From the NCBI GenBank assembly GCA_976226885.1, contig OZ320314.1:101556001-101620000 (forward strand): a stretch of DNA of 64,000 nt. The letters run 5' to 3'. Shown here piece by piece: positions 17,232-32,553 of this stretch. The notes beneath the pieces are model-generated. The model was not told the origin of the DNA and did not search any database. It saw nothing but the letters and a program-made list of their open reading frames with translations. The stretch comes from Iphione sp. A-MEVVRFRX5 (taxonomy: Eukaryota). Numbering within the stretch: the stretch's first letter is position 1; each line of letters opens with the position of its first letter. Made by a program: the position numbers and the translations under genes.

Positions 17232-18075
17232 AAATAACTTCCACACACGAAGAAATTATGAAAGGAGAACAAAAAATAATAAGCACAACTATATAATACA
17301 CATTTCCATTGTTCAGCTCTGTACTATTTACTGCTGTATACACCAAGGTGGAGTATACATACACATATACAGATACAGTATGCCATTATGTCTTACTATT
17401 GTCCTTACAACTGACAATTTGCATATTCCAAGCAAAAAATAATAATTACCCGAAGCCAGGCACCTTACTCAGAATGTTGAGCAATCGATGCTGGCCCATT
17501 TAGGGCTCATACACTAATGACAAATCTGTTACCTGTAAACATATGTTTGTAATCCATAACTCAGATTGTTGAGCAAGGATTCTTACATACATCTTGCTTC
17601 AGTACACAGACATTTCACATAACCTTCTGATACTGTTCTTATAACTTTCATACATGAAGAAATTTACGACAGAAGAACAAAAAATAATAGACACGACTAT
17701 ACAATACACATTTCCTTTGTCCAGTTCTATAGCTCTGTACTATTTACTACTGTATACATCCAAGTTGGAATATACATACACACACACAGGCACAGTTCGC
17801 CATTTTGCCTATTATTACCCTTACAACAGACAATTTGTATATTCCAGGAAAAAAAAAAAAAAAAAAAAAAATTTTTGCCTTGTAACCAGCACCTTACTCA
17901 GAATGTTGAGCAATGGATACTGGCCCATGAAGAGCTCATACGTTAATGACATATCTGTTACCTGCAAGCATATGTTTGTAATCCATAACTCAGATTGTTG
18001 AGTAAGGATTCTTCCATACATCTTGCTTCAGTACACAGACATTTTACATAGCCTTCTGACACTGTTCTTAAATTC
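17232..18075. repeat. Diverged ~415-bp tandem duplication of the LINE ORF end plus 3' UTR
   Basis: About 17232-17645 aligns by eye with about 17646-18075 (for example CACCTTACTCAGAATGTTGAGCAAT and CATATGTTTGTAATCCATAACTCAGATTGTTGAG occur in both). Both copies contain the last codons K-N-S-x-R-R-L-C-x-M-S-V-Y-stop. Confidence 0.85.
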
Positions 18076-20829
18076 TGGTTTCTTTTGAGATCGAACATAC
18101 TGAGGGAGACCATTCCACACCTTGATTCCCTTGCACACAAATCCTTTCTGATACACATTACTCATACATTTGTCTGGCTTTAGATCATTGTTTGCAGCTG
18201 AACGTGTTCTCCCACCTCCTGCTACTGGAAATTTACATATTCTCGACAGATCATAAAAAAGTAATGCCAGATGGTATCTCATTCTTTCATCCACCCCAAG
18301 CATACCATTCTCACTCATCCATACACGGGCTCTTTCTCTCGAGGGGTAACCTGATAAAAAACATTGTTTAATGGCATCACAGACAGCATTATCAAGTTTC
18401 TCTATTGCTGATGCCGAGGCTCCCACCAGAAATTCGATACCATAATTTAATACTGATAGCACAAAGGCACTAAAGGCTAATGTTAATGTTCTTTTGTCAA
18501 GTCCCCATTTTGCCCGTGCTAAAAAGTAGCTCTTCACCCTCATCTGCTTTACCTTATAGTCAATCATAGTCTGAAAGTTTAACCTTTCATCAATATCGTA
18601 ACCAAGATATTTAAAAGTTTTTACCCGCCCCAGTGTAGATCCATCAATTGCCAGGTCTAGGTCATAAGCAGACGCCTTCCCAAAACACATGTATTTTGAC
18701 TTTTCAGTATTCAACTTCATTCCCACTTCATCACACCAGACAGATATTTGTCTTAGTGTGTGCTGTAATTTAGTATTAAGAGCCCACGCGCTACAACCCC
18801 ACCCATATATTGTAATGTCGTCTGCATAGACAACCAAGTGGCAAGGGAACGATTTCTCCTGCACATCGTTTATCAACATAGAGAACAACCAGGGGCCCAT
18901 AATGGACCCCTGGGGCACCCCCATTGACAGAGACTTAAATGTAGAGTAGATCCCATTACAAAGCACCCTCTGTTCCCTTCGATCCAGATATTCCTCAAAC
19001 CATCTGAGCACAGCTCCCTGATAACCATAACTCGAAAACTTTGCTAATATTATTTTATGTGATACAAGATCAAAGGCCTTGCTTAGATCAAGATAAATGA
19101 CTGCTGGGTACCTATCTTTATTGCAGTCCTCAGCCACATATTTCAGTAGACTAGCACAGGCTGTTGCACATCCTCTTCCTTGCCTAAATCCATGTTGACA
19201 GTCCATCATAATATTGTTATCGACAGCAAAGGCTGATACCTGATCTAGTACTACCCTTTCCACGATCTTTCCGGGTACCGGTAAGAGAGATACTGGCCGG
19301 TAATTTTTTATATCATGCCTACTTTTTTTCTTGTGCAAAGGCACGACTGTCGCATGTTTCCATGATTCAAGGAAACTGCTCGTACTCAAACATACATTTA
19401 CTATATGTGTGAATAAATGCAGCTTTATTTGTAGCAAATCTTTCAGTATCCTCATACTCATGCCCTCAACCCCACTTGGCTTCGAAACTTTAAGGTTCTT
19501 AATATGCTTTATAACTACATTAGGTCTAACTTCATCAAACCGCGTCATCTTTTCATGTGGCATGGCTTTGTCTATGTCTCCTACGCTAATGTTTTTATTG
19601 GCTAAGTTTTCAACCGAAGTGATGAAGTGATTGTTTAATAACTCTGCACTTTCCTCATCTGCCCTTAAACTCCCATCAACTTTCAAACTTATACTACACT
19701 TCTTACGTGTGTCCCCAAATATTTGGCCAGTAATCACCTGCCACAATTTACGTGGATCACTCGCAGCCCTAGATATCTTTTCCCTCATTACCCTGCGTTT
19801 TGCCCTAATTATTTCTCGATTTGTTAAGTTCTTGTAATATTTATGCATCCTATAGTAATCCACATTCCCCGTTACCCTATGTCTACGAAAGAAATAATCC
19901 CGTTCTCTTCCCAACTCCAGCACTAGCCCACTCAACCACTCAGGTCGTGTTCTGCGTTGCCTTATCTCAATATAGGGTGCCAAACTATCTAGTGCCTCCA
20001 TTCCTGTTCCTATCAAATCATCCCATAATCTATTTATGTCCGTACCATTGTTGCCCTCCATGTTATGCTTGTCTAGCTCATCCTTGAAAGCTGCATAAGT
20101 ATACCTCCTATAGTCTCTTCTAACTGTTACCACAGGGTTAGTCAACTTACCCACCTTTTTCTTCTTTATGATCACATAGACAGGTACATGGTCACTTGAT
20201 GAGTCGGCCCATGTCCCCATCTGCCATACGTGTGGACTATTCAAATAGACATGATCTAGACAGGAGCCTAATTGATAAGTAGGAGTCGTAATCACTTGTT
20301 TAAGCAAAAAGTTCTTCTCCAGATTCACGCATTTGTTCTTTTTCACATCTGCTTTTAACCAATCCACATTCATATCACCAAGCACACATATCATTCTTCC
20401 ATCAATACGTCTCAGCTCAGACAGAATTCCACTTAACCTTTTCAGATAATTGTCCAAGTTTCCACAAGGACGCCTATAAACACCTATGATAAATTGAGTT
20501 TTTCTATTACCTGGTTTTATCTTTAGACTTAATATATGTCCATCCCGATCCACTGATGACAAGTCTTCTAATACCTCTATCTTATAATCGAACTTACTGT
20601 AAACTACTATTCCACCCCCTACTCTCAAACCAGTTGCTAAGGGACAACGATCTTGTCTAATTACGTTATACCCACTCATTTCTATCACTGATGTCGGAAT
20701 GGTCTCCCCCAACCATGTCTCCACCAATATAAGTATGTCAATATGTTTTTGAAAAAGCAATATCTCAACATTGCTTAATTTACCTAGAATGCTATGTATA
20801 TTCCAGGCTGCTAACGTGAAGACAGTCAT
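18028..20829 (-). CDS. LINE endonuclease-reverse transcriptase (APE + RT), 933 aa, intact
   Basis: APE motifs WNIHSI, ETWL, GDMNVD, LDHVY, SDH. RT motifs NYRPVSLLPV, QHGFR, LDLSKAFDLVSH, GVPQGSIMGPWLF, YADD, FKYLG. No internal stops. Confidence 0.95.
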   Translation of the reverse strand: MTVFTLAAWNIHSILGKLSNVEILLFQKHIDILILVETWLGETIPTSVIEMSGYNVIRQDRCPLATGLRVGGGIVVYSKFDYKIEVLEDLSSVDRDGHILSLKIKPGNRKTQFIIGVYRRPCGNLDNYLKRLSGILSELRRIDGRMICVLGDMNVDWLKADVKKNKCVNLEKNFLLKQVITTPTYQLGSCLDHVYLNSPHVWQMGTWADSSSDHVPVYVIIKKKKVGKLTNPVVTVRRDYRRYTYAAFKDELDKHNMEGNNGTDINRLWDDLIGTGMEALDSLAPYIEIRQRRTRPEWLSGLVLELGRERDYFFRRHRVTGNVDYYRMHKYYKNLTNREIIRAKRRVMREKISRAASDPRKLWQVITGQIFGDTRKKCSISLKVDGSLRADEESAELLNNHFITSVENLANKNISVGDIDKAMPHEKMTRFDEVRPNVVIKHIKNLKVSKPSGVEGMSMRILKDLLQIKLHLFTHIVNVCLSTSSFLESWKHATVVPLHKKKSRHDIKNYRPVSLLPVPGKIVERVVLDQVSAFAVDNNIMMDCQHGFRQGRGCATACASLLKYVAEDCNKDRYPAVIYLDLSKAFDLVSHKIILAKFSSYGYQGAVLRWFEEYLDRREQRVLCNGIYSTFKSLSMGVPQGSIMGPWLFSMLINDVQEKSFPCHLVVYADDITIYGWGCSAWALNTKLQHTLRQISVWCDEVGMKLNTEKSKYMCFGKASAYDLDLAIDGSTLGRVKTFKYLGYDIDERLNFQTMIDYKVKQMRVKSYFLARAKWGLDKRTLTLAFSAFVLSVLNYGIEFLVGASASAIEKLDNAVCDAIKQCFLSGYPSRERARVWMSENGMLGVDERMRYHLALLFYDLSRICKFPVAGGGRTRSAANNDLKPDKCMSNVYQKGFVCKGIKVWNGLPQYVRSQKKPEFKNSVRRLCKMSVY

Positions 20830-21885: not shown

Positions 21886-23505
21886 TCAGGTAATTAATGA
21901 TGCTCTCACTTCCATTAGTGCAATACCTGTGAGATTTTTTCCAGTCCAACTACCGCTAGTCACCTTCTTGTCCCACAGATGACAGCCCGAACCAAGGACC
22001 GAGTCGATACTCGCCTCTACTAGAGTCACAGCACCTGTGTTGATCAGTTCCTTCTTGAAGCACTCATTTACAGCAGCCTTGGCATGTAGTCCTTCTTTCA
22101 AAATCTCACTTTGCATATGAGACCAGTCTTTCGAGCGACGAATTTGATATGACAATGTCCTAGCCTTACTCGGTACCAGCTCTGACTGAATGCGCTTCCT
22201 CAGATCGTTATTGTTATGTAATCGCGCACATTCAGCTGCAAGCCAGTGATCAACAGATCTATACTTGTCACCCCCCAACTCAATTTGGACTAGGGCTTCG
22301 TTAGACAGCATACTATGTGGGCCACCAAAAAACATGGTCTCCCCTACCTGTCTATGGGCTGTTTCTGCCAAAGTAATCCCTTCAGGCATATTATGTAAGT
22401 CGTTACTACCGTACTCCTTGCCCTCAACTTTTAGCGTCACACCCTGGACAGTCGACCTCATACCTTTGCGCTTGGCTAGGTTACTAATTGCTCTCATATC
22501 CCTATTTATTGACCTCATCTCGGGTGGTAAGTCATCCCGAAAGGATAGACCCGATCCACCCCTCAACCGATTCAGATTTGACTTGTTTGAGTAGACTGAA
22601 TTACGAACATCCTCCCCAATCATTTTTACTAGGATTGGCCGAGGTTTTTTAGACATATTCCCTATACGGGTCGCAGATAAGAGAGCATCTGAATAGTAAA
22701 CCTTGTCAAGCTTCCCTAACAAAACATTTACAATGCCCCACGTGTCCTCATTTTTGCGCTCAGCCAGACCTTCAATTACAAAATTACATTTTCGGCTATT
22801 TACTTCAAGAGCCTGGATTTTATTTTCCAAATGTGATATCTTGTCATCAAGACTACATAATTGATCATGTAATGGCTCTAGTTTGCCTGAACAAATACTG
22901 CGCACACTCTCCTCAATAACAGTTTTAATGGAATCTAGGGTCGCCATTCTCTGGGTCATATTGTCCACCTTATTTGAAAGCACTTCCATAGTCTGTAGAA
23001 TATGTTGAACTGATAGTTCGACAGCATTCACCTTTGCCAAGACAGGCTTATTGTCTGACAGCTCTTGTCTAATGTCATTTAATGTAGAGAGCATTGCTGC
23101 GCTACTCACCGGACTTGACCCACCTCCGATCGGTATCAGGGTAACCGGAGTGTTTGGGTTATTGTTCAATTCAATAAGACTTACATTCTGGCAGCCTTTA
23201 TCAGGAACACATGCGTCAGGCTCACTTGGAACAGGTACTGCTTGTGGGGGAAGTGGATACATCCCCCCTTGTCCTGGATCCTCGTCCACGTTGTAGACAG
23301 ACCCGGCCAGTCCTCCACTGCTACCCCGTTGAGCGACAATAGAGGTATCGGCCGATCCGCCATGCCGGTAGTCGAGTTCCACACTGGTCACGGTCATTTG
23401 AGTACTGTTATCCAGCGATTTCTTTCCTCCAGACACACTCCCTGCACTGCCTTTACCTTTGCCGCTCGAGAATGATCGTGTTTCCATCCTGGTTCCTCTT
23501 ATCAT
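21886..23505 (-). CDS. LINE ORF1: low-complexity N-terminus, coiled coil, L1-ORF1-like RRM/CTD, C-terminal NADAR (YbiA/DUF1768)-like domain
   Basis: Heptad region LDDKISHLENKIQALE, then NFVIEGLAE...RIG...PRPILVK...FRDDLP...LKVEGKEY (L1 ORF1-like). The last ~150 aa match the NADAR pattern: LSN...G..Y.SVDH...W...AK...L..TG..TLVEASID..LG.G...W.GKNLTG.ALMEVR. The frame is open from 23562 (GTG); the first ATG is at 23505. Confidence 0.85.
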   Translation of the reverse strand: MIRGTRMETRSFSSGKGKGSAGSVSGGKKSLDNSTQMTVTSVELDYRHGGSADTSIVAQRGSSGGLAGSVYNVDEDPGQGGMYPLPPQAVPVPSEPDACVPDKGCQNVSLIELNNNPNTPVTLIPIGGGSSPVSSAAMLSTLNDIRQELSDNKPVLAKVNAVELSVQHILQTMEVLSNKVDNMTQRMATLDSIKTVIEESVRSICSGKLEPLHDQLCSLDDKISHLENKIQALEVNSRKCNFVIEGLAERKNEDTWGIVNVLLGKLDKVYYSDALLSATRIGNMSKKPRPILVKMIGEDVRNSVYSNKSNLNRLRGGSGLSFRDDLPPEMRSINRDMRAISNLAKRKGMRSTVQGVTLKVEGKEYGSNDLHNMPEGITLAETAHRQVGETMFFGGPHSMLSNEALVQIELGGDKYRSVDHWLAAECARLHNNNDLRKRIQSELVPSKARTLSYQIRRSKDWSHMQSEILKEGLHAKAAVNECFKKELINTGAVTLVEASIDSVLGSGCHLWDKKVTSGSWTGKNLTGIALMEVRASLIT

Positions 23506-24016
23506 TGGTCTATTCGGTCTTATTCTGCCACTATCACTACGAAAATGCTGGAGCCAGGTCACAACACGTCTGGTCTACTCGGCGGCCATTTTCCTAGGTG
23601 TATATATCTATAGATATTGTGGCATGTGGTCCATTCTCAGTTAAGTGTAGCATCAGGTGTCTTCAGTATTGAAGCAGGGCTGAGGCAATGCATGCTGCCA
23701 AAGTGTTAGATATAACACCATTTTATGATTCTAGATGTAATTTCTGTTAATTTGATATATAGTTTTACTAGTCTAAAATAGATATTTATGGTCAAAATTC
23801 CATGTCAAAGATGCTTTGTGCCTTAAAAACCCCCTGTCCATTGTCTGAGTGGTTAAATAGACATTGACAGTTAATAAATAAATATACATTTAAATGAAGC
23901 TGTTGTTTGTTATTCATTCCTTGCTTGCCTTTGGGTAGCAGAATATGACAGACTTGATTCTTCCTGTTGTATGTCTCATGCCTGAGGTGATGGAATTGGC
24001 TTGTCCATGTATTTTG

Positions 24017-24392
24017 TGTAATCTACGCTATTACACATGTAATGTGTACCAGCTATTATTATATTATGACCCTTGTGATTTAAAAAGTACCAAACAGTAG
24101 GCGAGGTTGGAGCATGTCTGAGGCATGAGCAATTCTGAACATATTCAGTGATAAATGTCCTCAGCTGGAGAAGAATGAAATGAGTTAATAGTAGTTTTTT
24201 TAAGGATGTCATCTACGCTATGTGCATTACTCTAAAACCTACAGTATGACAAGTTTTTTTTATGGTTGTCAAGGAAAAGGGCCTATGTGACAATAAAGTA
24301 ATAATGATAGTGCAACATATCTACAAAATGGTCCAGACATATGATCATTAATGGCCAAAATTGTAATATACGCTATGTGTCATCTACGCTAT
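24017..24392 (+). repeat. Dispersed 15-bp motif TGTMATCTACGCTAT, left array
   Basis: Copies at 24017, 24207, 24362 (variant TGTAATATACGCTAT) and 24378, with unrelated spacers. Confidence 0.85.
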
Positions 24393-24924
24393 GTAGAATG
24401 GAAGTTTTAGAAAATGTGGCGAAAATCATGGAATTTGACAAAGAAAACGATAGATGGCAGTACTGTACTTCAGAACGGTACCCTGGTGGCAAAACTATGT
24501 ACTATTGGCGCCCTTGCTGCACCAAGTGGACAAGGACAAGAACCTACTTTCGCGCTCGTCGAGTTTGTGTGAGTATAAATATAAATTGATGGTACTTATC
24601 TCCGAATGTAAAGTAGATTACCATATTTGGCATATAGAGTATAAATTAGCAAGATTTTCTCGAAACTTGGAAGAAAAAACTATGTTTGAGATGTTATTAA
24701 CCGATAATGTTAAGGAAGGTCATAAAATATAGCGTAAATGACTGAAAAAGTGTCGTATATGACACTATATCATATTAGTATAAAAAGAAGCTGTATTAAT
24801 CGGTTATCATCGGGGAATTAATTGCAAGTGACTCTGAAGTGCTTTGTGAATATAAAGCAAGTTGTAAGCTGGAAATGTTGTTTGAAATATATTATCAAAA
24901 ATGTATAACTTGTTGCATAGGAAA

Positions 24925-27900
24925 ATGGCAAGAAAATCAGTCTCACAAATCTGCAAAGACTATCGGCAGAGGAAGAAGAGTGCCCCAGATGGAGTAGAAT
25001 GGAAGGCTAAAGAAGCTGAACGGACCAGCAGGTATGTAAAACATTTTCTGATGTTTCTCTAATTAATACTGTTGGTAGTCTCTAACATTTGTAGTTGTCT
25101 CCGACCATTCTCTAACAATTCTCTTACAAACTTTGTTAGAGATTCAAACGACTCATCACTAAGTTCACAATTTCTCTCACAAAATAACAGAGGTAGATGT
25201 GTGTACGTCTGAAAGAAAATTTTAATGATCTCTAATGTTTCTCGCACAGAATTATTACAGTTTCACAAAATTAAAAAAGATACATGTTCAGGCTTCACTT
25301 TTCACAAAATTAAAAAAGATGTATGTTCAGGCTTCACTGTTCAATGCAAACTAGTCCAAGTTAAGCCCGGCACGTCCCTGGGCACACGCCACTTTTAGTA
25401 GGCCCACGAGGTACTGCTCCTTAGATTTCGATCCTGCCACTTTAAGGTACCGATCCTGGAGCACTTGGATGTCCGCTGAAGTCAGTGGTGATCTGATCGG
25501 TGGCTCCATTGGTCTACGAGTGAGGACCATGCTGGGGACTGTGGGTGGGACTGTGACTGGGACGGTGGCTGATGCTGAAGCACTCACATCGGGCCTTGAC
25601 ACAGGTTGTTGAGTAATTTCCATTTCCTGAAGATGTGTCTCCAGCTCATTAACCTTCACTTCCAACTCTAAACGAGTACTGTCCTTTAGAGCAGTGTATT
25701 GGTCTTGTCTGGCCTGGCGCTCCCCTGCCACTGCCTCACGTCGGTCCTGCACCTCAGTGGCGAGAGCAGCAGACAGTGATTGCAGCTCCCCAATCTGTTG
25801 CCGTAACACCCCCAACTCATCTCGAAGTGCCTTGATTTCTTCCTGCTGCTTGTCAGATTCTTCCTTCCGTACGCGCACCTCCACTTTGAGGAGGTCCCTG
25901 GTGCTCTTAACATCCTTCAGGGAAGCGTTGATCCGCCGCATCTCATGCTGCATGTGGTACAGAGCCCGCTCTTTGTGGTTGAGGGACTCTTGCTGCGTGC
26001 GAACCATCTCCTCCAGCTTTTGTACGGTAACTGCGCCCTTGCCTGTCTTCTGTGATGTTTGAGCGGATGCAGACACGGGTGGGGATGGCGCAGGTGAGAC
26101 TGATGCCCTAGTGCGGCGCTTAGTGGACACGGGTGGGGGTGGCGCAGGTGACGCTCCCTTAGCACTGCACTTAGAAGTTGACTTGGGCCTTGGAATCTTA
26201 CTTCTTGACCGGGTCTGTGGCCCTTCAGAGTCAGAGGAGTCTGAGAATGAAAAAAAAACATGCACATATCCAATTAATACCTATGTATATATTCTCATTT
26301 CTAGTGTGCATTGTGCAAACTTTGGTTTAAACATCTGATCTTCAACAATTAATTTAACGCCTCATACACTTAGATCTGCATTATAATCTCTCACATCTTT
26401 AACGATTACAAGTACATTCCATTGAACATTGTCTTATAATACATTGAGAGGAAGGAATGTATTAAGCCTAGTGAAAAAAATGTCGGTGTTTCCGGCAATT
26501 GGACGACCCTACATTGTAGCTAGTTGTACCTTTTTTCTTGTTTTGTGAATACAATTACAATGTTGTCTTATAATATTACTGACCCCTATCCTGCAGCAGC
26601 TCGTAACGGCTGAGCTCATTGTGGTAACGCTCCATTTTGGCCTGGTACTCCTCCTCGGTGTCCCTGTCTAGCCGGTAGGGGAGCTTGGGACGCAAACCCT
26701 TAGCTGTAATTTAGCCAATGATACCAAATTTAAAACATACCCATTATACAATAACACATTTATTATGAATGACAGATAAGTAAAATCGCTGTCTTACATA
26801 AATTATGAAGCTCTAGGTGGTTACTCAAAACAAGACTTTACGTACCTTGTCGCTCCTTTCGCCTACTCTCCTCCATTTGGAGCCTTGCTTTTTTCTTTAA
26901 TTCTGCTGGGTCCTGCTTGTCTCTCCACGCCTTGCAGCTTTCAGCGTGGCTCAACTTCTTATCTTCAGGAGTCTCAGCCTGTGGGGTTTCCTGCTCTGTG
27001 TCGGTACTCATGGGACTTGGTTGTTTCTCAGCCATAATGTACTCCTTCTGATCAGCGCAAGGTGTAGCCGCAGAGTGAGCAGTGGTGGCAGGGGAAGCAC
27101 CGTGGCCCCCAAAGCGTCCCACGTAGGCGCGCATCAGTTAAGGGCCTATTAAGTGTTGCTAGGCGACGCTCGCCTGATGTGCGCTTTTATGTGGGGTGAC
27201 TATGACCACACTGTTCAGAACTGACACGTTGTTAGACGGCGGATCTCCAGGCCTCCCTGTCTGGTCTGATATTCCATCTTATAAATGCGCTTTGTACTTG
27301 CAATCTCTCACAAATTGAGTATATAGAACCCATCAACAACACACTGAATTTTCATTATTTCTAGCAATCTTTAACAGAATTCTAATAATCTCGCACAGAC
27401 TCTAACAGAATTCTAATAATCTCGCACAGACTCTAACAGAATTCTAATAATCTCGCACAGACTCTAACAGAATTCTAATAATCTCGCACAGACTCTAACA
27501 GAATTCTCATCTCGCACAGACTCTAACAGAATTTTCATCTCGCACAGACTCTAACAGAATTCAACAGAATTCTCATCTCGCACAGACTCTAACAGAATTC
27601 TCATCTCGCACAGACTCTAACAGAATTCTCATCTCGCACAGACTCTAACGGAATTCTAATAATCTCGCACAGACTCTCATGATCTTGCACACTAACCTCT
27701 CACCTTGAAGTGAGTGTTGTCATATTGAAGCAGTGTATATAAACATAGGATGAACACTTTGACACAACATGTCTCTCACATTTCTCTAACAGAATAATTG
27801 GATTCACTATTTAACCACATTTCAGGTACTATGTTCCAATTAGTGAGGTGAAAAACAAGAAGGAACTGTTCCTGCGCCGAGAACGGAACCGACAAGCACA

Positions 27901-30169
27901 GGAGAGGAGGCGTGCACGACTGAAGGCCGAGCGGGAACAGCAGCATGAGCAGCTGACCTCTCAGCAGTCCCCTCTGCAATCTTCCCAGCAATCCTCCCAA
28001 AACTCATCTCAGGCCAGCACATCATCAATTGGGCCGTCATCTTCTGACTCCACTGGCAATGCAATGCCAGTGGCATTCCCCTTCATGACACCTGCAGGGC
28101 GCCATAGGAGCAGAAAACGCATCAGCAGGGCCGTAGCCAAGAGCAAAAGGAAAGTAGAGAAGTTGGAGCGGGAAAAGAAGACCTCAGCGAGGCTTGTGTG
28201 GAAACTCCAGAAACGCTTACAGAGGGCACAGGCCAAGATCAAGAAGCTGGCGGCAAAGAAGAAGAAGCGGCCAACCCCTAAGGACAAGGCTATGGAGGAC
28301 CTCATGAAGGCAGGTTTAGATCCATTTGAGCATGAAGGACTCCTGCGTAAATTAACTGCACATCACTCCGTCCTGGAACAGATCAGGAGTGGCGCTGTAA
28401 AGAGGATATCACGGCAGAAACATTCTCTAGAGCGAATAATAGCTGGGCGACTGACCCGTAAGTACAAGGTGTTGCGATACCTGGGCCATGAGACCTCACT
28501 CAACCGAAACCATCTAGGCACAAGATCTTTCACAAAGAAGAGGCGCCTTCCTACTCTTCGAGAGGACCTCCGTAAATGTGTCGTCACATTCATGGAACGA
28601 GATGACATTTCACGTGTGATGCCCGGTAAGCGTGACAACACCCGCATTGGTCCCAAACGAGTGCAGACCCGAGTGCTTACAGATTATGTAGCTAATATCT
28701 GGAACAAGTTCCAGTTGGAGTATCCGAACAAGAAGATTTCCCTCTCCGTTTTCTGTCGTCTGCGACCTGCGCACATAAAGGTTTCAGCCTTTTCCAGCCG
28801 CACATCATGTCTGTGTGTATACCACCAGAACATGGTACTGAAGCTTAAAGCTGGGGGAATATCCACCTCCCCTGACGTACTAGTCAGAGAGCATGAGTCA
28901 AATGACAACATCTTGGATGCTTGCACAGTGAATGACCCCGTCACCTACTACACCTGGGAGAAAGTGAAAACTGAAGATAGAAGCCAGGTGAAATGTGTCA
29001 AGAAAACGGAGGAAAGAGATACATTCTTAGCTGAACTACGTGAAGACCTGATCAAGTTCAGGGGGCATGTTGCACGTATTTCACTTCAGTTTACAGCACT
29101 GAGGCAGTTGAAAGACACACTTAATTGCAACGAGGCTATTGTTCATATGGACTTTGCCGAGAATTATACTTGTAAAAATGTGGCAGAAGTTCAGTCTGCA
29201 TACTGGGCTCAGACCCAAGTCACAGTACATCCTGCCCTTTGTTACTACAGGCAGCGGCCTGGGGAGCAGCTTAAGCACAAGAGCTTTGTTTATGTGAGTG
29301 CCATCAACTCACACAACCCGACAACCGTCACTGCCATTCTCCGAGAGATCAATGATGATCTAGATAAGATGTTGCCTGAAATAAAAACTGTCCACTATGT
29401 CACAGATGGGCCAACATCCCAATATCGCAACAAGGTCATCTTCCATATTGTTGGGAATCACCAGTTCTACTTTCAGAGAGCTGCAACGTGGACCTACCAC
29501 GAGGTAGGCCACGGCAAAGGTCCCTGCGACGGCATCGGCGGTACTGTAAAGCGTTTGGCTGATGATGCTGTAAAACAGAACAAGGCAGTCATAGCCAATG
29601 CCAATGACTTCTACACCTGGATGCAGGGCGAACGTTCCATCATCACAAGTAAATTGCTCACACAGAACCAGGTGGATGCAGCAGAGGAGATGGTGGATAA
29701 TATGGATGCAAAACCAATCAAGGGTACCCTTGCAATTCACGCTGTTGTTGGGCTAAGACATGGGGCAATTGCGACAAGATCCACCAGTTGCTACTGTGAC
29801 CAATGTAAATCCCTTGATCTCTGCAATGGTTGGAATGTAGTGAACGTCAAGAAGCAAGATCAGAAACTGTCACTTGAAAAGGGATCCTGGGTTGCAACTG
29901 ATTATTCAGGAATGGCTTACTATGGACGGGTCGAGGATTGCCGTGATGAAGAGGAAACCACTGAATACAAGATTAATTTCCTACTTCCACGCCAGAGTGA
30001 TCCATCAAAGATGTCATGGCCGAAGAAAAAGGACATCATGTGGCTGACAACTGCCGACATGATTTGCAATGTTCCCGCCCCTACAGAAGTTGGATCAACC
30101 TGCACCTTCCCTAGCAAGATCCTGCGCAGAGTTGACCTGCTTCTTGCAACAAGGAACGAAAACCAGTAA
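24925..30169 (+). CDS. Sola2-like DDD transposase, two coding exons join(24925..25031,27826..30169), ~816 aa
   Basis: Exon 1 MARKSVSQICKDYRQRKK...ERTS ends in AG|GTATGT (phase 2). Acceptor TTTCAG|G at 27826 continues in frame (RYYVPISEVKNKK) into the 773-aa ORF. Motifs CLCVYHQN, MDFAENY, VHP, TDGPTSQYRN, GHGKGPCDGIGGTVKR, CYCDQC. I assign the superfamily from recalled Sola2-type motifs, so it is less certain than the transposase call itself. Confidence 0.75.
25351..27035 (-). CDS. Nested antisense gene, complement(join(25351..26240,26584..26703,26846..27035)), 399 aa, basic/coiled-coil protein of unknown function
   Basis: Donors G|GTACGT (26845) and G|GTCAGT (26583). Acceptors TACAG| (26703) and TTCTCAG| (26240). 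Both introns are phase 1. The spliced length is 1200 nt with no internal stop. Basic N-terminal helix, Ser/Pro linker and a long coiled coil. Confidence 0.75.
27370..27680. repeat. Minisatellite, 10 copies of ATCTCGCACAGACTCT(AACAGAATTCT...), 28/31-bp units
   Basis: Copies start at 27388, 27419, 27450, 27481, 27509, 27537, 27575, 27603, 27631 and 27662. Confidence 0.95.
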
Positions 30170-30307
30170 TTGTTAGAGACATGTATACACGGTTCAAGTG
30201 CAAATTTCATTAGAGACACATTTCTAACTCATTTTATAGTTCACGATTTGCTAGTCTGTGGCAGGGTTTTAATGTTCTACTCATGCACTAGATCATGTTT
30301 AGAGTTG

Positions 30308-31579
30308 CGTCATCTACGCTACAATGTAAAGAATGCATTCAAATAGTTGTCTAATATCACAAACCTACACACAAAATGTGGAAGATTTGTTAGATATGTT
30401 CATCAGCTTTACTCCCAAACAGCATAAGACGATTCCAAATGGTCACAGAGAATGTTTGAGAATGTTTGAGAGAAACGTGAAAGATGTCATCTACGCTATG
30501 AAGTTATAGAGGCCTGCAGGTTATTCATGTCAGGGATATGATAGGAAATAATGACAAATATGTTAGAAAATTCATCCATATTATTTACAGTCTAAAAAAC
30601 ATACTGATAAAGTATTTTGTGGGAGACTTGTGAGAGATTTGTTAGAGCTGTCATCTACGCTATCCAATTACTGACTTCATTTATTGCATTCCATCTTAAT
30701 CCTTCTTCCCAAGTTATTCCTGTTGAATCATGTCAATTAAACTGCATACTTGGGTTCTCATACACATTTGTTGCAATACCATATCGATTCATTGCATTTA
30801 CACACAAAGAGGGAGTGACCATAGATTATGTCATCTACGCTATCAAGTTTCAGATTCAATGTTTTCGTAACTTGTACATCACTGGTATGCAGCATTTAGA
30901 AAGAATTAATTTAAATGAGTAGCACACATTTCAATTGCACTTTTTGCGTGCACATTCTCTCTATTATTAACATATTTGACATGATCATGGATCTTTCCAA
31001 TACATGAAATTGCTGTTAAAGATACACTATAAAATGTCATCGTTGAGACACATGCAACCATAGGATGAAAATGGTCTCTTTTTTCAATATTACTGCTCTG
31101 TGCATGATATACTGCTGTTCATTCACTCCAGATTTCAGTCAATATCCACAAATAGACATTTTGTGTGTTATTTACATCTGTGTCATCTACGCTATTCTTA
31201 ACATAACAGATCTGGATCAACTTCTCTGCTGTAATGGTATATAACATGGAATAAATAAGGGATTTACTGCTTTGTAAAAGATTGCCTGTCTGACTCATTC
31301 TAAAATAACACATAATTTGAATTACATTGGCTCCATTAATAACTGTGAAAGTCTGTCTTACTTTCAGACACATTGCTTTTACTTGTAATAGAAAATTTAG
31401 TGGTAATTTCTATGCTGGTTACCACAGATTCATAAAGTCATATAAACAATTTGGGATACATACCTCAAATCAACACATACAATATCATATATTAGTTATT
31501 AAAAATTTTACAATATTTACCTTATAATTAAGTATACCATCGTCTAATGACTTTAAGAGTGATAATAGCGTAGATTACA
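30308..31579 (+). repeat. Dispersed 15-bp motif TGTCATCTACGCTAT, right array plus one inverted copy
   Basis: Direct copies at 30308 (CGTCATCTACGCTAC), 30485, 30649, 30829 and 31181. Inverted copy ATAGCGTAGATTACA at 31565-31579. Confidence 0.85.
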
Positions 31580-31984
31580 TATCTACTTTTATTGAATTGC
31601 TTTACTTAAGTTTAAACATCCATTCCACAAAATGTATGATACCTTGAATCACAAAAATTTCCAACATTATGCTTCAATGCCTTCTCCATCAGGGAACAAC
31701 AGTGAGCTGTCTTTTTGCACAAATTTTTTTTTTTCAAATAGTCTCCTACAGATGCTACACTTAACTGGGAATGGACCATGTGTGCATGGAATGGTTGTGT
31801 GGGGGTGTGCATGCGGAGAGTGAGTGTGATGTGTGGGAAATGGCTGTGCAGTGAATGTGTGCATAAGTGCTCCGCACCTAAGACTATATAAGGTGTGATG
31901 TGTGGGCAAAGTTCAGTTGCCTTCTAGTACTTGTGGAATAAACATCTTGAACCTTTCCTCTGAGTTCATGCGTCATGAGTTTGC

Positions 31985-32350
31985 AAAGTGGTATGTGTGT
32001 AGTTGTATGCATAGATGTGTGTCTGGATATGTGTTTTGTGTATGTACCTATAGATATATGTGTAGTTGTGTGTATAGATGTGTGTATGGATGTGTATAGG
32101 TGTATGTGTCTTTGATGTGTGTAGTTGTGTGTGGAAATGTGTAGGTGTACATGTATATGTCTTTGATATGTGTGCAGTTGTAGTTGTGTGCTTTTTTTAT
32201 ATTTGTGTAATTGTGTGTAATAGATGTGTGTATGGATGTGTGTATGGATATGTGTAGGTGTATCTGTTTTTGATATGTGTGTAGTTGTGTGTACATATCT
32301 GTGTAGGTGTATGTGTCTTGGTGCTTGTATGAATTTATATATTTGTCTTT
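31985..32350. repeat. GT-rich degenerate minisatellite
   Basis: Repeated GATATGTGTGTAGTTGTGTGTATAGATGTGTGTATGGA-like units, the same family as 17050-17160. Accounts for the spurious T/H/Y-rich ORFs here. Confidence 0.8.
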
Positions 32351-32553
32351 ATTTGAGTGTGTACTGGTGTACATACATGTAGGCCTCCATGTCGGTGTGA
32401 GCATGTAGAAATATCAGAATGTATTCATATAGAAAATTGTGCTGGTACCTGAATATGAATGTGTCTAGTTGCACAGGCATATTCAGACATAGGTGTGAAG
32501 GTGTATGACTAGATGTAAATGTGCAGATGTATATATATACATATATGAATGCA

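What the first reader, a model, noticed from the sequence alone, without database searches (positions are those of the whole stretch)
24925..30169. Two-gene DNA transposon: an intact antisense three-exon gene nested in the first intron of a Sola2-like transposase
Seen in sequence: a short upstream exon splices in frame across 2.8 kb (25032-27825) to the long transposase ORF. That intron contains a complete 399-aa gene on the opposite strand, with canonical splice sites and no stops. Established: accessory genes are known in Harbinger, Kolobok, EnSpm and MuDR, whereas Sola elements were described as transposase-only as far as I recall. Inference: this is a co-inherited regulator or helper, and overlapping antisense transcription could also control transposase expression.
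Basis: partly seen in the sequence, partly recalled or inferred. Interest (0 to 1): 0.8.

Follow-up and report, generated by a model that had tools for sequence, protein, structure and literature searches.

The report
Sola2 transposon with intron-nested passenger gene
An apparently intact 8.15-kb Sola2-type jumping gene carries, inside a lineage-specific intron of its transposase gene, a complete opposite-strand gene for an orphan coiled-coil protein; the layout is real, but whether the extra gene helps the element is unproven.

Summary
Both splice models reproduce with GT..AG borders and no stops. The transposase is 816 aa. The antisense protein is 399 or 432 aa.

The locus is one 8,150-bp element (23628-31777) with 27-bp terminal inverted repeats (TIRs) and a 4-bp target-site duplication (TSD), ATGT.

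The exon 1-exon 2 splice is supported by homology. Exon 1 encodes the N-terminus that all eight related loci examined carry inside one uninterrupted reading frame.

Sola2 assignment is supported by three catalytic motifs with spacing 85/41, against 87/43 in a published Sola2 transposase, and by the 4-bp TSD.

The nested gene looks like a real gene. Its exons are 51-58% GC against 30-32% for its introns, it has a 309-codon open frame, and only the annotated frame scores as coding. It is an orphan: an exhaustive HMMER search found only one compositional match.

Relatives in an oyster, amphioxus and a sea urchin have neither the intron nor a second gene, so this is a lineage-specific acquisition, not a family hallmark.

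The claim that Sola elements encode only a transposase is wrong: Sola2-Fanzor1 elements are published.

No RNA runs were listed, so expression is untested.

Unchecked scan notes on other pieces of this genome also mention multi-gene Sola elements.

The parts
23624..23627 (.). Left target-site duplication ATGT
   Evidence: The same 4 bases directly follow the right TIR at 31778-31781.
23628..23654 (+). Left terminal inverted repeat (27 bp, starts GGTCCATTC)
   Evidence: It matches the right TIR at 26 of 27 positions. These are the only two matches in the 64-kb window, with 0 expected by chance.
24017..24743 (.). 5' arm with five copies of the 15-bp subterminal motif. Written as ATAGCGTAGATGACA, four distal copies are on the - strand and one proximal copy on the + strand.
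   Evidence: All 11 copies in the window lie inside the element. The same orientation pattern and a related motif (GTAACGTAnGTyyCA) occur in relatives from an oyster, amphioxus and a sea urchin.
24925..25031 (+). Transposase exon 1 (start codon plus 35 2/3 codons)
   Evidence: It encodes the conserved N-terminal motif and scores 27 bits alone against the relatives' HMM. Exon 2 has no in-frame Met before residue 116.
25032..27825 (+). Transposase intron (2,794 bp), absent at this site in all relatives examined
   Evidence: Borders are GTATGT...TTTCAG, and a CTAAC branch-point-like site lies about 36 nt upstream of the acceptor. The hexamer CAGGTA straddles both borders. The intron ends carry no TIRs.
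25221..25226 (-). ATTAAA polyadenylation-type signal about 125 nt after the antisense stop codon
   Evidence: It lies inside the intron and upstream of transposase exon 1.
25351..26240 (-). Antisense gene exon 3 (296 codons plus stop): Ser/Pro-rich basic linker, a 138-residue helix, and a small two-helix C-terminus
   Evidence: helix at residues 72-209 of the exon-3 product, pLDDT 97-98. GC is 55%.
26584..26703 (-). Antisense gene exon 2 (120 nt, keeps the frame)
   Evidence: AG/GT borders. GC is 58% between introns of 30-32%.
26846..27134 (-). Antisense gene exon 1 coding part. Met at 27134 has a weak start context. Met at 27035 has a strong context and gives 399 aa.
27135..27371 (-). Putative antisense 5' UTR and promoter region (TATA-like sites near 27285 and 27325 on the - strand)
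   Evidence: Read from the sequence. Inference only.
27372..27677 (.). Tandem array of about 10 copies of a 31-bp unit holding TCTCGCACAG and CTCTAACAG
   Evidence: Shorter copies of the motif lie at 25080-25250, at 27784, and inverted at 30171 and 30640.
27826..30169 (+). Transposase exon 2, holding the catalytic core: D435, D520 and D561 in ORF numbering, D478, D563 and D604 in the spliced protein
   Evidence: All 16 family-invariant columns are retained. The AF2 model has pLDDT 81.6, and the best Foldseek hits are RNase H-like transposases and integrases.
30170..31750 (.). 3' arm with six copies of the subterminal motif (five on the - strand, the last on the + strand)
31751..31777 (-). Right terminal inverted repeat
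31778..31781 (.). Right target-site duplication ATGT

Best explanation
Positions 23628-31777 are one apparently intact Sola2-type cut-and-paste DNA transposon. It has 27-bp TIRs, a 4-bp TSD and arrays of a 15-bp subterminal motif in a family-typical orientation pattern.

Its transposase gene, which is intronless in every sampled relative, is split after codon 36 by a 2.8-kb spliceosomal intron. That intron holds a self-contained opposite-strand gene with three exons, its own TATA-like region and its own polyadenylation-type signal. The gene encodes an orphan protein that is mostly disordered apart from one long helix.

The most likely history (inferred) is that foreign or rearranged DNA carrying this gene was inserted into the 5' coding region of the transposase. 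The insertion was tolerated because it is removed by splicing. The hexamer CAGGTA stands at both intron borders, as expected if a duplicated protosplice site supplied the donor and acceptor.

The gene is therefore a lineage-specific passenger that travels with the element. Its most likely effect on the element is regulatory rather than catalytic. One route is head-on transcription through the transposase intron. Another is pairing of the antisense RNA with the transposase pre-mRNA. A third is a nuclear coiled-coil protein that oligomerises.

Shown: element borders, splice-compatible structure, homology of exon 1, orphan status, and absence of the module in relatives. Inferred: expression, mode of acquisition and function.
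For: TIR and TSD.

Conserved arm architecture and similar TIR in relatives.

Splice models.

Exon 1 homology and a gapless HMM alignment across the junction (37.4 bits; exon 1 alone 27 bits; exon 2 alone none). Among nine loci searched in six frames, only the window has the N-terminal motif split.

Relatives are single-gene elements with no antisense homologue and no other ORF of 70 aa or more lying wholly inside the TIRs outside the transposase ORF.

Coding signal of the antisense gene.

Orphan status.

Protein shape.

No TIRs at the intron ends.

Intron ends share a short motif with the element's own right arm (E 0.02-0.18).
Against: - Only one copy could be examined, and no other copy of this genome was reachable.
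- There is no RNA evidence for any junction or for expression.
- The CAGGTA repeat at the borders is built from splice-consensus bases and could be coincidence. My rough estimate from remembered splice-site frequencies is under 1%, and this was not computed.
- Similarity of the intron ends to the right arm is marginal.
- The closest sampled relatives share only 33-45% transposase identity, so a fast-evolving accessory gene in closer, unsampled relatives cannot be excluded.
Confidence: 0.55

Rival explanations
1. The antisense gene is a genuine accessory gene of a two-component Sola2 lineage. Its product would be needed for, or would enhance, transposition, as the Myb-like protein does in PIF/Harbinger. 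Possible roles are bridging the subterminal repeats or importing the transposase into the nucleus.
For: The gene is complete, open and carries its own signals inside an otherwise intact element. It has a basic Ser/Pro-rich segment and a long coiled coil suited to oligomerisation. Unchecked scan notes report second genes in other Sola elements of this genome.
Against: The gene is absent from all eight related loci, whose transposase genes are intronless. No DNA-binding or other domain was found. Its resemblance to the transposase N-terminal motif is not above chance: 850 of 5000 shuffles score as well.
Confidence: 0.2
2. The 2.8-kb segment is an independent nested insertion: another mobile element, or a cassette moving by its own mechanism, that landed in this one copy.
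For: Relatives lack the segment. The CAGGTA repeat at both borders could be a target-site duplication.
Against: The ends carry no terminal inverted repeats: local alignment score 15 against a shuffle mean of 15.8. No transposase, integrase or reverse transcriptase domain is present. There is no second copy in the window. The intron ends carry motifs also found in the element's own right arm.
Confidence: 0.1
3. The antisense 'gene' is not functional. It would be a captured or rearranged fragment, or a young de novo ORF, that is still open by chance and is not expressed.
For: It has no homologue anywhere. It is largely low-complexity and coiled coil. No expression data exist.
Against: The 309-codon open frame was never reached in 7000 shuffles. 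Exon and intron GC contrast sharply, and the coding score is frame-specific. All four splice borders are canonical.
Confidence: 0.12
4. The locus is a domesticated host gene pair rather than a transposon.
For: Both ORFs are intact. Only a single copy is seen in the window.
Against: The locus has a perfect 4-bp TSD, near-perfect TIRs and family-typical subterminal repeat arrays. It sits inside a TG-rich minisatellite next to a LINE.
Confidence: 0.03

Closest known systems
Sola2 group of the Sola superfamily of DNA transposons (Bao, Jurka and co-workers 2009, recalled from memory; Sola2 features as restated in PMC3627910)
   Same: The transposase is a DDD type with no Pfam model. The motifs DFxEN, xDG and HGKxxxD have the same spacing as in the published Sola2_DFa-2 transposase. 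The TSD is 4 bp and the element has TIRs. Relatives occur in amphioxus, sea urchins and bivalves.
   Different: The transposase gene is interrupted by a 2.8-kb intron that holds a second, opposite-strand gene. At 8.15 kb the element is longer than its single-gene relatives (5.1-6.3 kb).
Sola2-Fanzor1 chimeric elements of Dictyostelium fasciculatum and Polysphondylium pallidum (Bao and Jurka 2013, PMC3627910)
   Same: They are Sola2 elements that carry a second protein-coding gene inside the TIRs and have 4-bp TSDs.
   Different: There the second gene encodes a TnpB-like Fanzor1 nuclease and lies in the 3' part of the element. Here it encodes an orphan coiled-coil protein nested antisense in a transposase intron.
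Two-gene DNA transposons: PIF/Harbinger (transposase plus Myb-like protein), MuDR (mudrA/mudrB), En/Spm
   Same: Each is a cut-and-paste element with a second gene that moves with it.
   Different: In those families the second gene is conserved across the family, and for Harbinger it has a recognisable DNA-binding domain and a shown role. Here it is absent from relatives and has no recognisable domain.
Passenger-gene capture by DNA transposons (Pack-MULEs, CACTA and Helitron captures)
   Same: Non-transposase coding DNA is carried inside the element, and it is lineage-specific.
   Different: Captures are usually fragments of identifiable host genes. Here the unit looks complete, with start, stop, introns and its own signals, and no parent gene or homologue was found.
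Intron gain by DNA insertion flanked by short direct repeats (recalled from memory: Daphnia intron gains, introner elements)
   Same: A new intron sits at a site that is uninterrupted in relatives, with the same short sequence at both borders.
   Different: The intron is 2.8 kb, carries a whole gene and lies in a transposase gene. No repeated introner family was shown.

Membership tests
Sola2 (Sola superfamily) | RNase H-like DDD catalytic core with Sola2-type motifs | tested here: met
   D435, D520 and D561 are invariant in a 30-sequence family alignment. The motifs HMDFAEN, TDGPTSQYRN and GHGKGPCDG correspond to MDFKEN, SDGAKHFKS and YHGKSDVD of the published Sola2_DFa-2. Spacing is 85/41 against 87/43, counted by hand. 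The AF2 core shows a beta-beta-beta-alpha-beta-alpha-beta order, and the top Foldseek hits are IstA, retroviral integrases, PIWI and Mos1.
Sola2 (Sola superfamily) | 4-bp target-site duplication | tested here: met
   ATGT stands at 23624-23627 and 31778-31781. The Lytechinus relative has GGTA, and the amphioxus relative has TATA, which is ambiguous because it is palindromic. The Sola2 TSD length is taken from PMC3627910.
Sola2 (Sola superfamily) | Terminal inverted repeats | tested here: met
   The TIRs are 27 bp and match at 26 of 27 positions. The sequence is similar to the amphioxus relative's TIR.
Sola2 (Sola superfamily) | Phylogenetic placement with Sola2 rather than Sola1 or Sola3 | not testable with these tools
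   Repbase Sola1/2/3 transposases were not available by reference. A profile word search did not reach the dictyostelid Sola2 proteins.
Two-component DNA transposon with an obligatory accessory gene (Harbinger-like logic) | The accessory gene is conserved in related elements | tested here: not met
   There is no homologue and no second ORF in eight related loci. There are no relatives in 1.84 billion representative proteins.
Two-component DNA transposon with an obligatory accessory gene (Harbinger-like logic) | The accessory gene recurs, intact, in other copies in the same genome | not testable with these tools
   Only this 64-kb window is readable.
Two-component DNA transposon with an obligatory accessory gene (Harbinger-like logic) | The accessory protein has a DNA-binding or transposase-binding module | tested here: inconclusive
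   No Pfam domain was found. Similarity to the transposase N-terminal motif is not significant. Only a basic Ser/Pro-rich stretch and a coiled coil are present.
Captured host gene (transduplication) | An identifiable parent gene or orthologues outside transposons | tested here: not met
   The word search found none. The exhaustive HMMER search gave one compositional hit to a TPR protein that looks bacterial. The host genome itself could not be searched.
bZIP DNA-binding proteins | Basic region followed by a leucine zipper; Pfam bZIP match | tested here: not met
There is no Pfam bZIP hit, no relative fits the pattern, and the antisense protein does not fit it either.

The most novel reading that the evidence does not exclude
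A metazoan Sola2 lineage gained an intron in its transposase gene through insertion of a gene-carrying DNA segment. The nested antisense gene has since become a working part of the element. It would be a coiled-coil regulator, or an antisense or transcriptional-interference switch, that tunes transposase output. That would make it a previously undescribed two-gene Sola architecture and an example of intron gain that delivers a whole gene.
Probability: 0.22. Interest if true: 0.65.

Novelty: new variant of a known kind. Interest (0 to 1): 0.45.

Why it matters
Sola2 elements are poorly studied, and animal Sola2 elements are known to me only as single-gene elements.

This copy shows how a cut-and-paste element can take a complete foreign gene into its own coding region without losing the transposase, because the insert is spliced out. 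If other copies keep the module, it would give a tractable case of accessory-gene birth in a transposon and of intron gain by insertion.

The comparison also yielded something useful on its own. The arm architecture is conserved across phyla: an ACGTA-core subterminal motif with a fixed orientation pattern, and related TIRs. These mark the probable transposase-binding sites of this family.

Tried and rejected
- RNA evidence. Two run searches, one on 24700-30400 and one on the antisense gene alone, listed no run.
- Shared N-terminal motif. I tested whether the antisense protein shares the transposase's N-terminal motif ('AE.QKAYRERKK'), which looked similar by eye. The full HMM gave no hit. The 20-column HMM gave -2.1 bits, reached by 850 of 5000 shuffles. 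Rejected.
- TIRs at the intron ends. None beyond chance.
- Larger homology between the intron and the element arms. Only 20-36-nt matches with E 0.02-0.18.
- A fourth antisense exon or a BEN-like C-terminus. No Pfam signal in any piece.
- Rfam on 23000-32500. Nothing.
- Reaching the published dictyostelid Sola2 transposases with a family profile. Not reached. The alignment figure in that paper's supplement is stored as unusable text. The two founding papers (Bao 2009; Yuan and Wessler 2011) are not held.
- Formal alignment to Sola2_DFa-2. I did not type the sequence into a tool because long sequences without a reference were to be left out. The motif and spacing comparison is by eye and hand count.
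- Atlas feature searches for both antisense pieces. No usable hit.
- Text searches for the transposase motifs or 'Cc8L18.2' in papers and supplements. Nothing.
Full report
**1. What is in the sequence**

Plus strand:
- An ATG at 24925 opens a 107-nt exon that ends CAG|GTATGT at 25031.
- The acceptor TTTCAG|G at 27825/27826 joins it in frame to the long ORF that runs to 30169.
- The product is 816 aa.

Minus strand:
- The three exons are 27134 (or the better-context Met at 27035)-26846, 26703-26584 and 26240-25351.
- All borders are GT..AG.
- The product is 432 or 399 aa with no stop.

The window contains no N.

The antisense reading frame is not a chance product:
- The longest open frame in the intron is 309 codons. 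None of 2000 shuffles of the intron and none of 5000 shuffles of the GC-rich exon-3 stretch reached 300 codons.
- The three antisense exons are 51-58% GC and its two introns 30-32%.
- With a codon table trained on the other ORFs of the window, the annotated frame scores +73 bits and the five other frames score negative.

**2. The element is larger than the finding**

A 27-bp inverted repeat (26 of 27 positions) lies at 23628-23654 and 31751-31777. These are its only two occurrences in the window. It is flanked on both sides by ATGT, a 4-bp target-site duplication.

The flanks on both sides are the same TG-rich minisatellite (D15), as expected for a simple insertion. The 5' end of a LINE abuts the left side.

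The element is therefore 8,150 bp, and both genes lie inside it.

A 15-bp motif (TGTCATCTACGCTAT and variants) occurs 11 times in the window, all inside the element.

**3. The transposase and its family**

Pfam finds nothing in the transposase, which fits the statement that Sola transposases lack Pfam models (PMC5751038).

The word search found 49 relatives. The best full-length hits are 33-36% identical (E down to 1.7e-133), and the partial hits P0019 and P0022 are 43-45% identical over about half the query. The relatives come from Pinctada, Branchiostoma belcheri, Lytechinus, Mytilus, Ptychodera, Rotaria, Aplysia and many unnamed assemblies.

A 30-sequence alignment has 16 invariant columns, and this copy keeps all of them. 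They include D435, F436, E438, N439, D520, G556, K557 and D561.

These three motifs and their spacing (85 and 41 residues) match the published Sola2_DFa-2 and Sola2_PPa-1 transposases printed in the supplement of PMC3627910. Those read MDFKEN, SDGAKHFKS and YHGKSDVD, with spacing 87 and 43 by my hand count. The same paper gives 4-bp TSDs as the Sola2 feature.

The AlphaFold model (pLDDT 81.6) places the three aspartates on an RNase H-like core. The best Foldseek hits are IstA transposase, retroviral integrases, PIWI, a terminase nuclease and Mos1. They are weak (E about 4e-4 and up) but all belong to that fold.

Atlas features and one alignment member point weakly to DUF7869.

I file the element as Sola2-like on motif, fold and TSD evidence.

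**4. The splice is supported by homology**

In 13 relatives the protein begins with a conserved motif (MGKSRAEIQKAYRERKK...YYVPS...RRN) inside one uninterrupted ORF.

An HMM of that region, built without this copy, was used for three tests:
- It aligns to residues 4-78 of the spliced protein at 37.4 bits, straight across the junction at residue 36.
- Exon 1 alone scores 27 bits, and exon 2 alone scores nothing.
- In a six-frame search of nine loci, only the window has the motif cut at HMM position 35. All eight other loci have it continuous.

Exon 2 has no in-frame Met before residue 116.

So exon 1 is the ancestral start of the gene, and the 2.8 kb between the exons is an addition in this lineage.

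**5. Relatives are single-gene elements with the same arms**

The amphioxus copy is about 5.1 kb and the Lytechinus copy 6.3 kb (TSD GGTA). Within their TIRs and outside the transposase ORF they have no other ORF of 70 aa or more, apart from short ones that straddle the element ends.

tblastn with the antisense protein finds nothing in any of the eight loci.

The arms are nevertheless strikingly alike. Each relative carries a motif GTAACGTAnGTyyCA with distal minus-strand copies, proximal plus-strand copies, the ORF, minus-strand copies, and often one last plus-strand copy. This element shows the same pattern with ATAGCGTAGATGACA: 24024-, 24214-, 24369-, 24385-, 24730+, the gene, then 30315-, 30492-, 30656-, 30836-, 31188-, 31566+.

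The amphioxus TIR (TCACCCATTCTCCGTTAACGTGTGCA) resembles this one (GGTCCATTCTCAGTTAAGTGTAGCA).

The backbone is thus an ordinary family member. Only the intron module is extra: 5.35 kb of backbone plus 2.8 kb.

**6. The nested gene**

No Pfam family reaches its threshold, in the whole protein or in its pieces.

The word search with the 295-aa exon-3 product found nothing.

The exhaustive HMMER search of 1.84 billion representatives gave one hit. It is a TPR protein that looks bacterial, aligned only through a proline-rich stretch and a coiled coil. I read that as compositional similarity, not homology.

Atlas feature searches gave no usable hit.

AlphaFold predicts, for the exon-3 product, a disordered first 70 residues, one continuous helix of 138 residues (pLDDT 97-98), a disordered Ser/Ala/Pro/Val-rich linker and two short terminal helices.

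The segment before the helix is basic and Ser/Pro-rich, with 13 K+R and 34 S+T+P in 71 residues. I read this as compatible with a nuclear, nucleic-acid- or chromatin-associated oligomer. That is inference.

Signals around the gene:
- TATA-like sites lie 150-190 nt upstream of the first ATG.
- An ATTAAA lies about 125 nt after the stop.
- Both are inside the intron.

The unit therefore overlaps no transposase exon.

**7. How the module got there**

The intron ends have no inverted repeats: alignment score 15 against a shuffle mean of 15.8. The segment encodes no mobility enzyme.

The hexamer CAGGTA stands at both borders (CAG|GTATGT ... TTTCAG|GTACTA). Removing one copy restores an uninterrupted T-S-R-Y-Y-V-P coding sequence that matches the relatives.

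This fits insertion or repair-mediated capture at a protosplice site, but it rests on consensus-like bases and is suggestive only.

Both intron ends and the 31-bp tandem array (27372-27677) carry a CTCTAACA-type motif. The motif also occurs, inverted, in the right arm beside the 15-bp motif (E 0.02-0.18). Part of the intron may therefore derive from the element itself. The last copy supplies a CTAAC branch-point-like site about 36 nt before the acceptor.

**8. Reading**

The structural claim is sound: a two-gene copy, with a complete antisense gene nested in a transposase intron.

The functional claim (helper or regulator) is open. In its favour, the module is intact inside an intact, probably young element. 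Against it, the module is absent from all sampled relatives, and the protein has no domain and no kin.

Because the antisense unit lies wholly within the intron, any antisense effect must act through transcriptional collision or pre-mRNA pairing.

The head-to-head region 27135-27825 could also drive an exon-2-only transcript encoding a transposase without its basic N-terminus. That is speculation.

**9. Earlier scan notes**

Unchecked first-reader notes on other pieces of this genome describe four things: a multi-gene Sola-type transposon, a head-to-head second gene inside a Sola element, a basic motif in both Sola proteins together with an ACGT-core repeat array, and a transposase whose 3.3-kb intron holds a complete antisense gene. 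These are leads that the layout may recur.

On this copy I could confirm the repeat arrays. I could not confirm a shared basic motif in both proteins.

**10. Limits**

- Only one copy was examined, there are no reads, and there is no access to the rest of the genome.

Noticed in passing
window 21886-23562 (-), with ORF2 at 18028-20829 (-): The 558-aa ORF directly left of the transposon has a coiled-coil middle and a C-terminal NADAR domain (Pfam PF08719, E 5.3e-21). It sits upstream of a 933-aa ORF on the same strand, so it looks like a LINE ORF1 with a NADAR domain. Its 5' end lies about 60 bp from the transposon's left TSD.
   Followed up: partly
window about 29890-30110 (transposase residues about 680-755 of the 773-aa ORF): The C-terminus of the transposase folds as a small beta-barrel. 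It hits a BAH domain in Foldseek (7cce, probability 0.99). In two or three relatives it gives weak Tudor or chromo-like Pfam hits. This suggests a possible chromatin-reader module for target choice.
   Followed up: partly
L001-L008 and window 24017-24743 / 30308-31579: The arm architecture is conserved across phyla (oyster, amphioxus, sea urchin, this genome): a 14-15-bp CGTA-core motif (ACGTA in the relatives, GCGTA here) in a fixed orientation pattern around the ORF, with related TIR sequences. These are probably the transposase-binding sites of this Sola2 lineage.
   Followed up: yes
P0038 (relative from a Logan assembly): One distant relative of the transposase (1007 aa) carries a Ulp1-type Peptidase_C48 domain (PF02902, E 1.5e-12).
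   Followed up: no
None of 53 relatives fits it, and there is no Pfam bZIP hit or leucine zipper. It is probably just the family's basic N-terminal region.
   Followed up: yes
window 27372-27677 and 25261-25343: Two tandem arrays lie inside the intron. One has about 10 copies of a 31-bp unit, each containing a branch-point-like CTAAC followed by CAG. The other has 2.1 copies of a 39-bp unit just after the antisense stop codon. The first array lies between the two gene starts and could be a shared control region or a set of decoy splice acceptors.
   Followed up: partly
window 31989-32320 and 23598-23617: A TG-rich minisatellite flanks the element on both sides. The transposon inserted into it.
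   Followed up: partly
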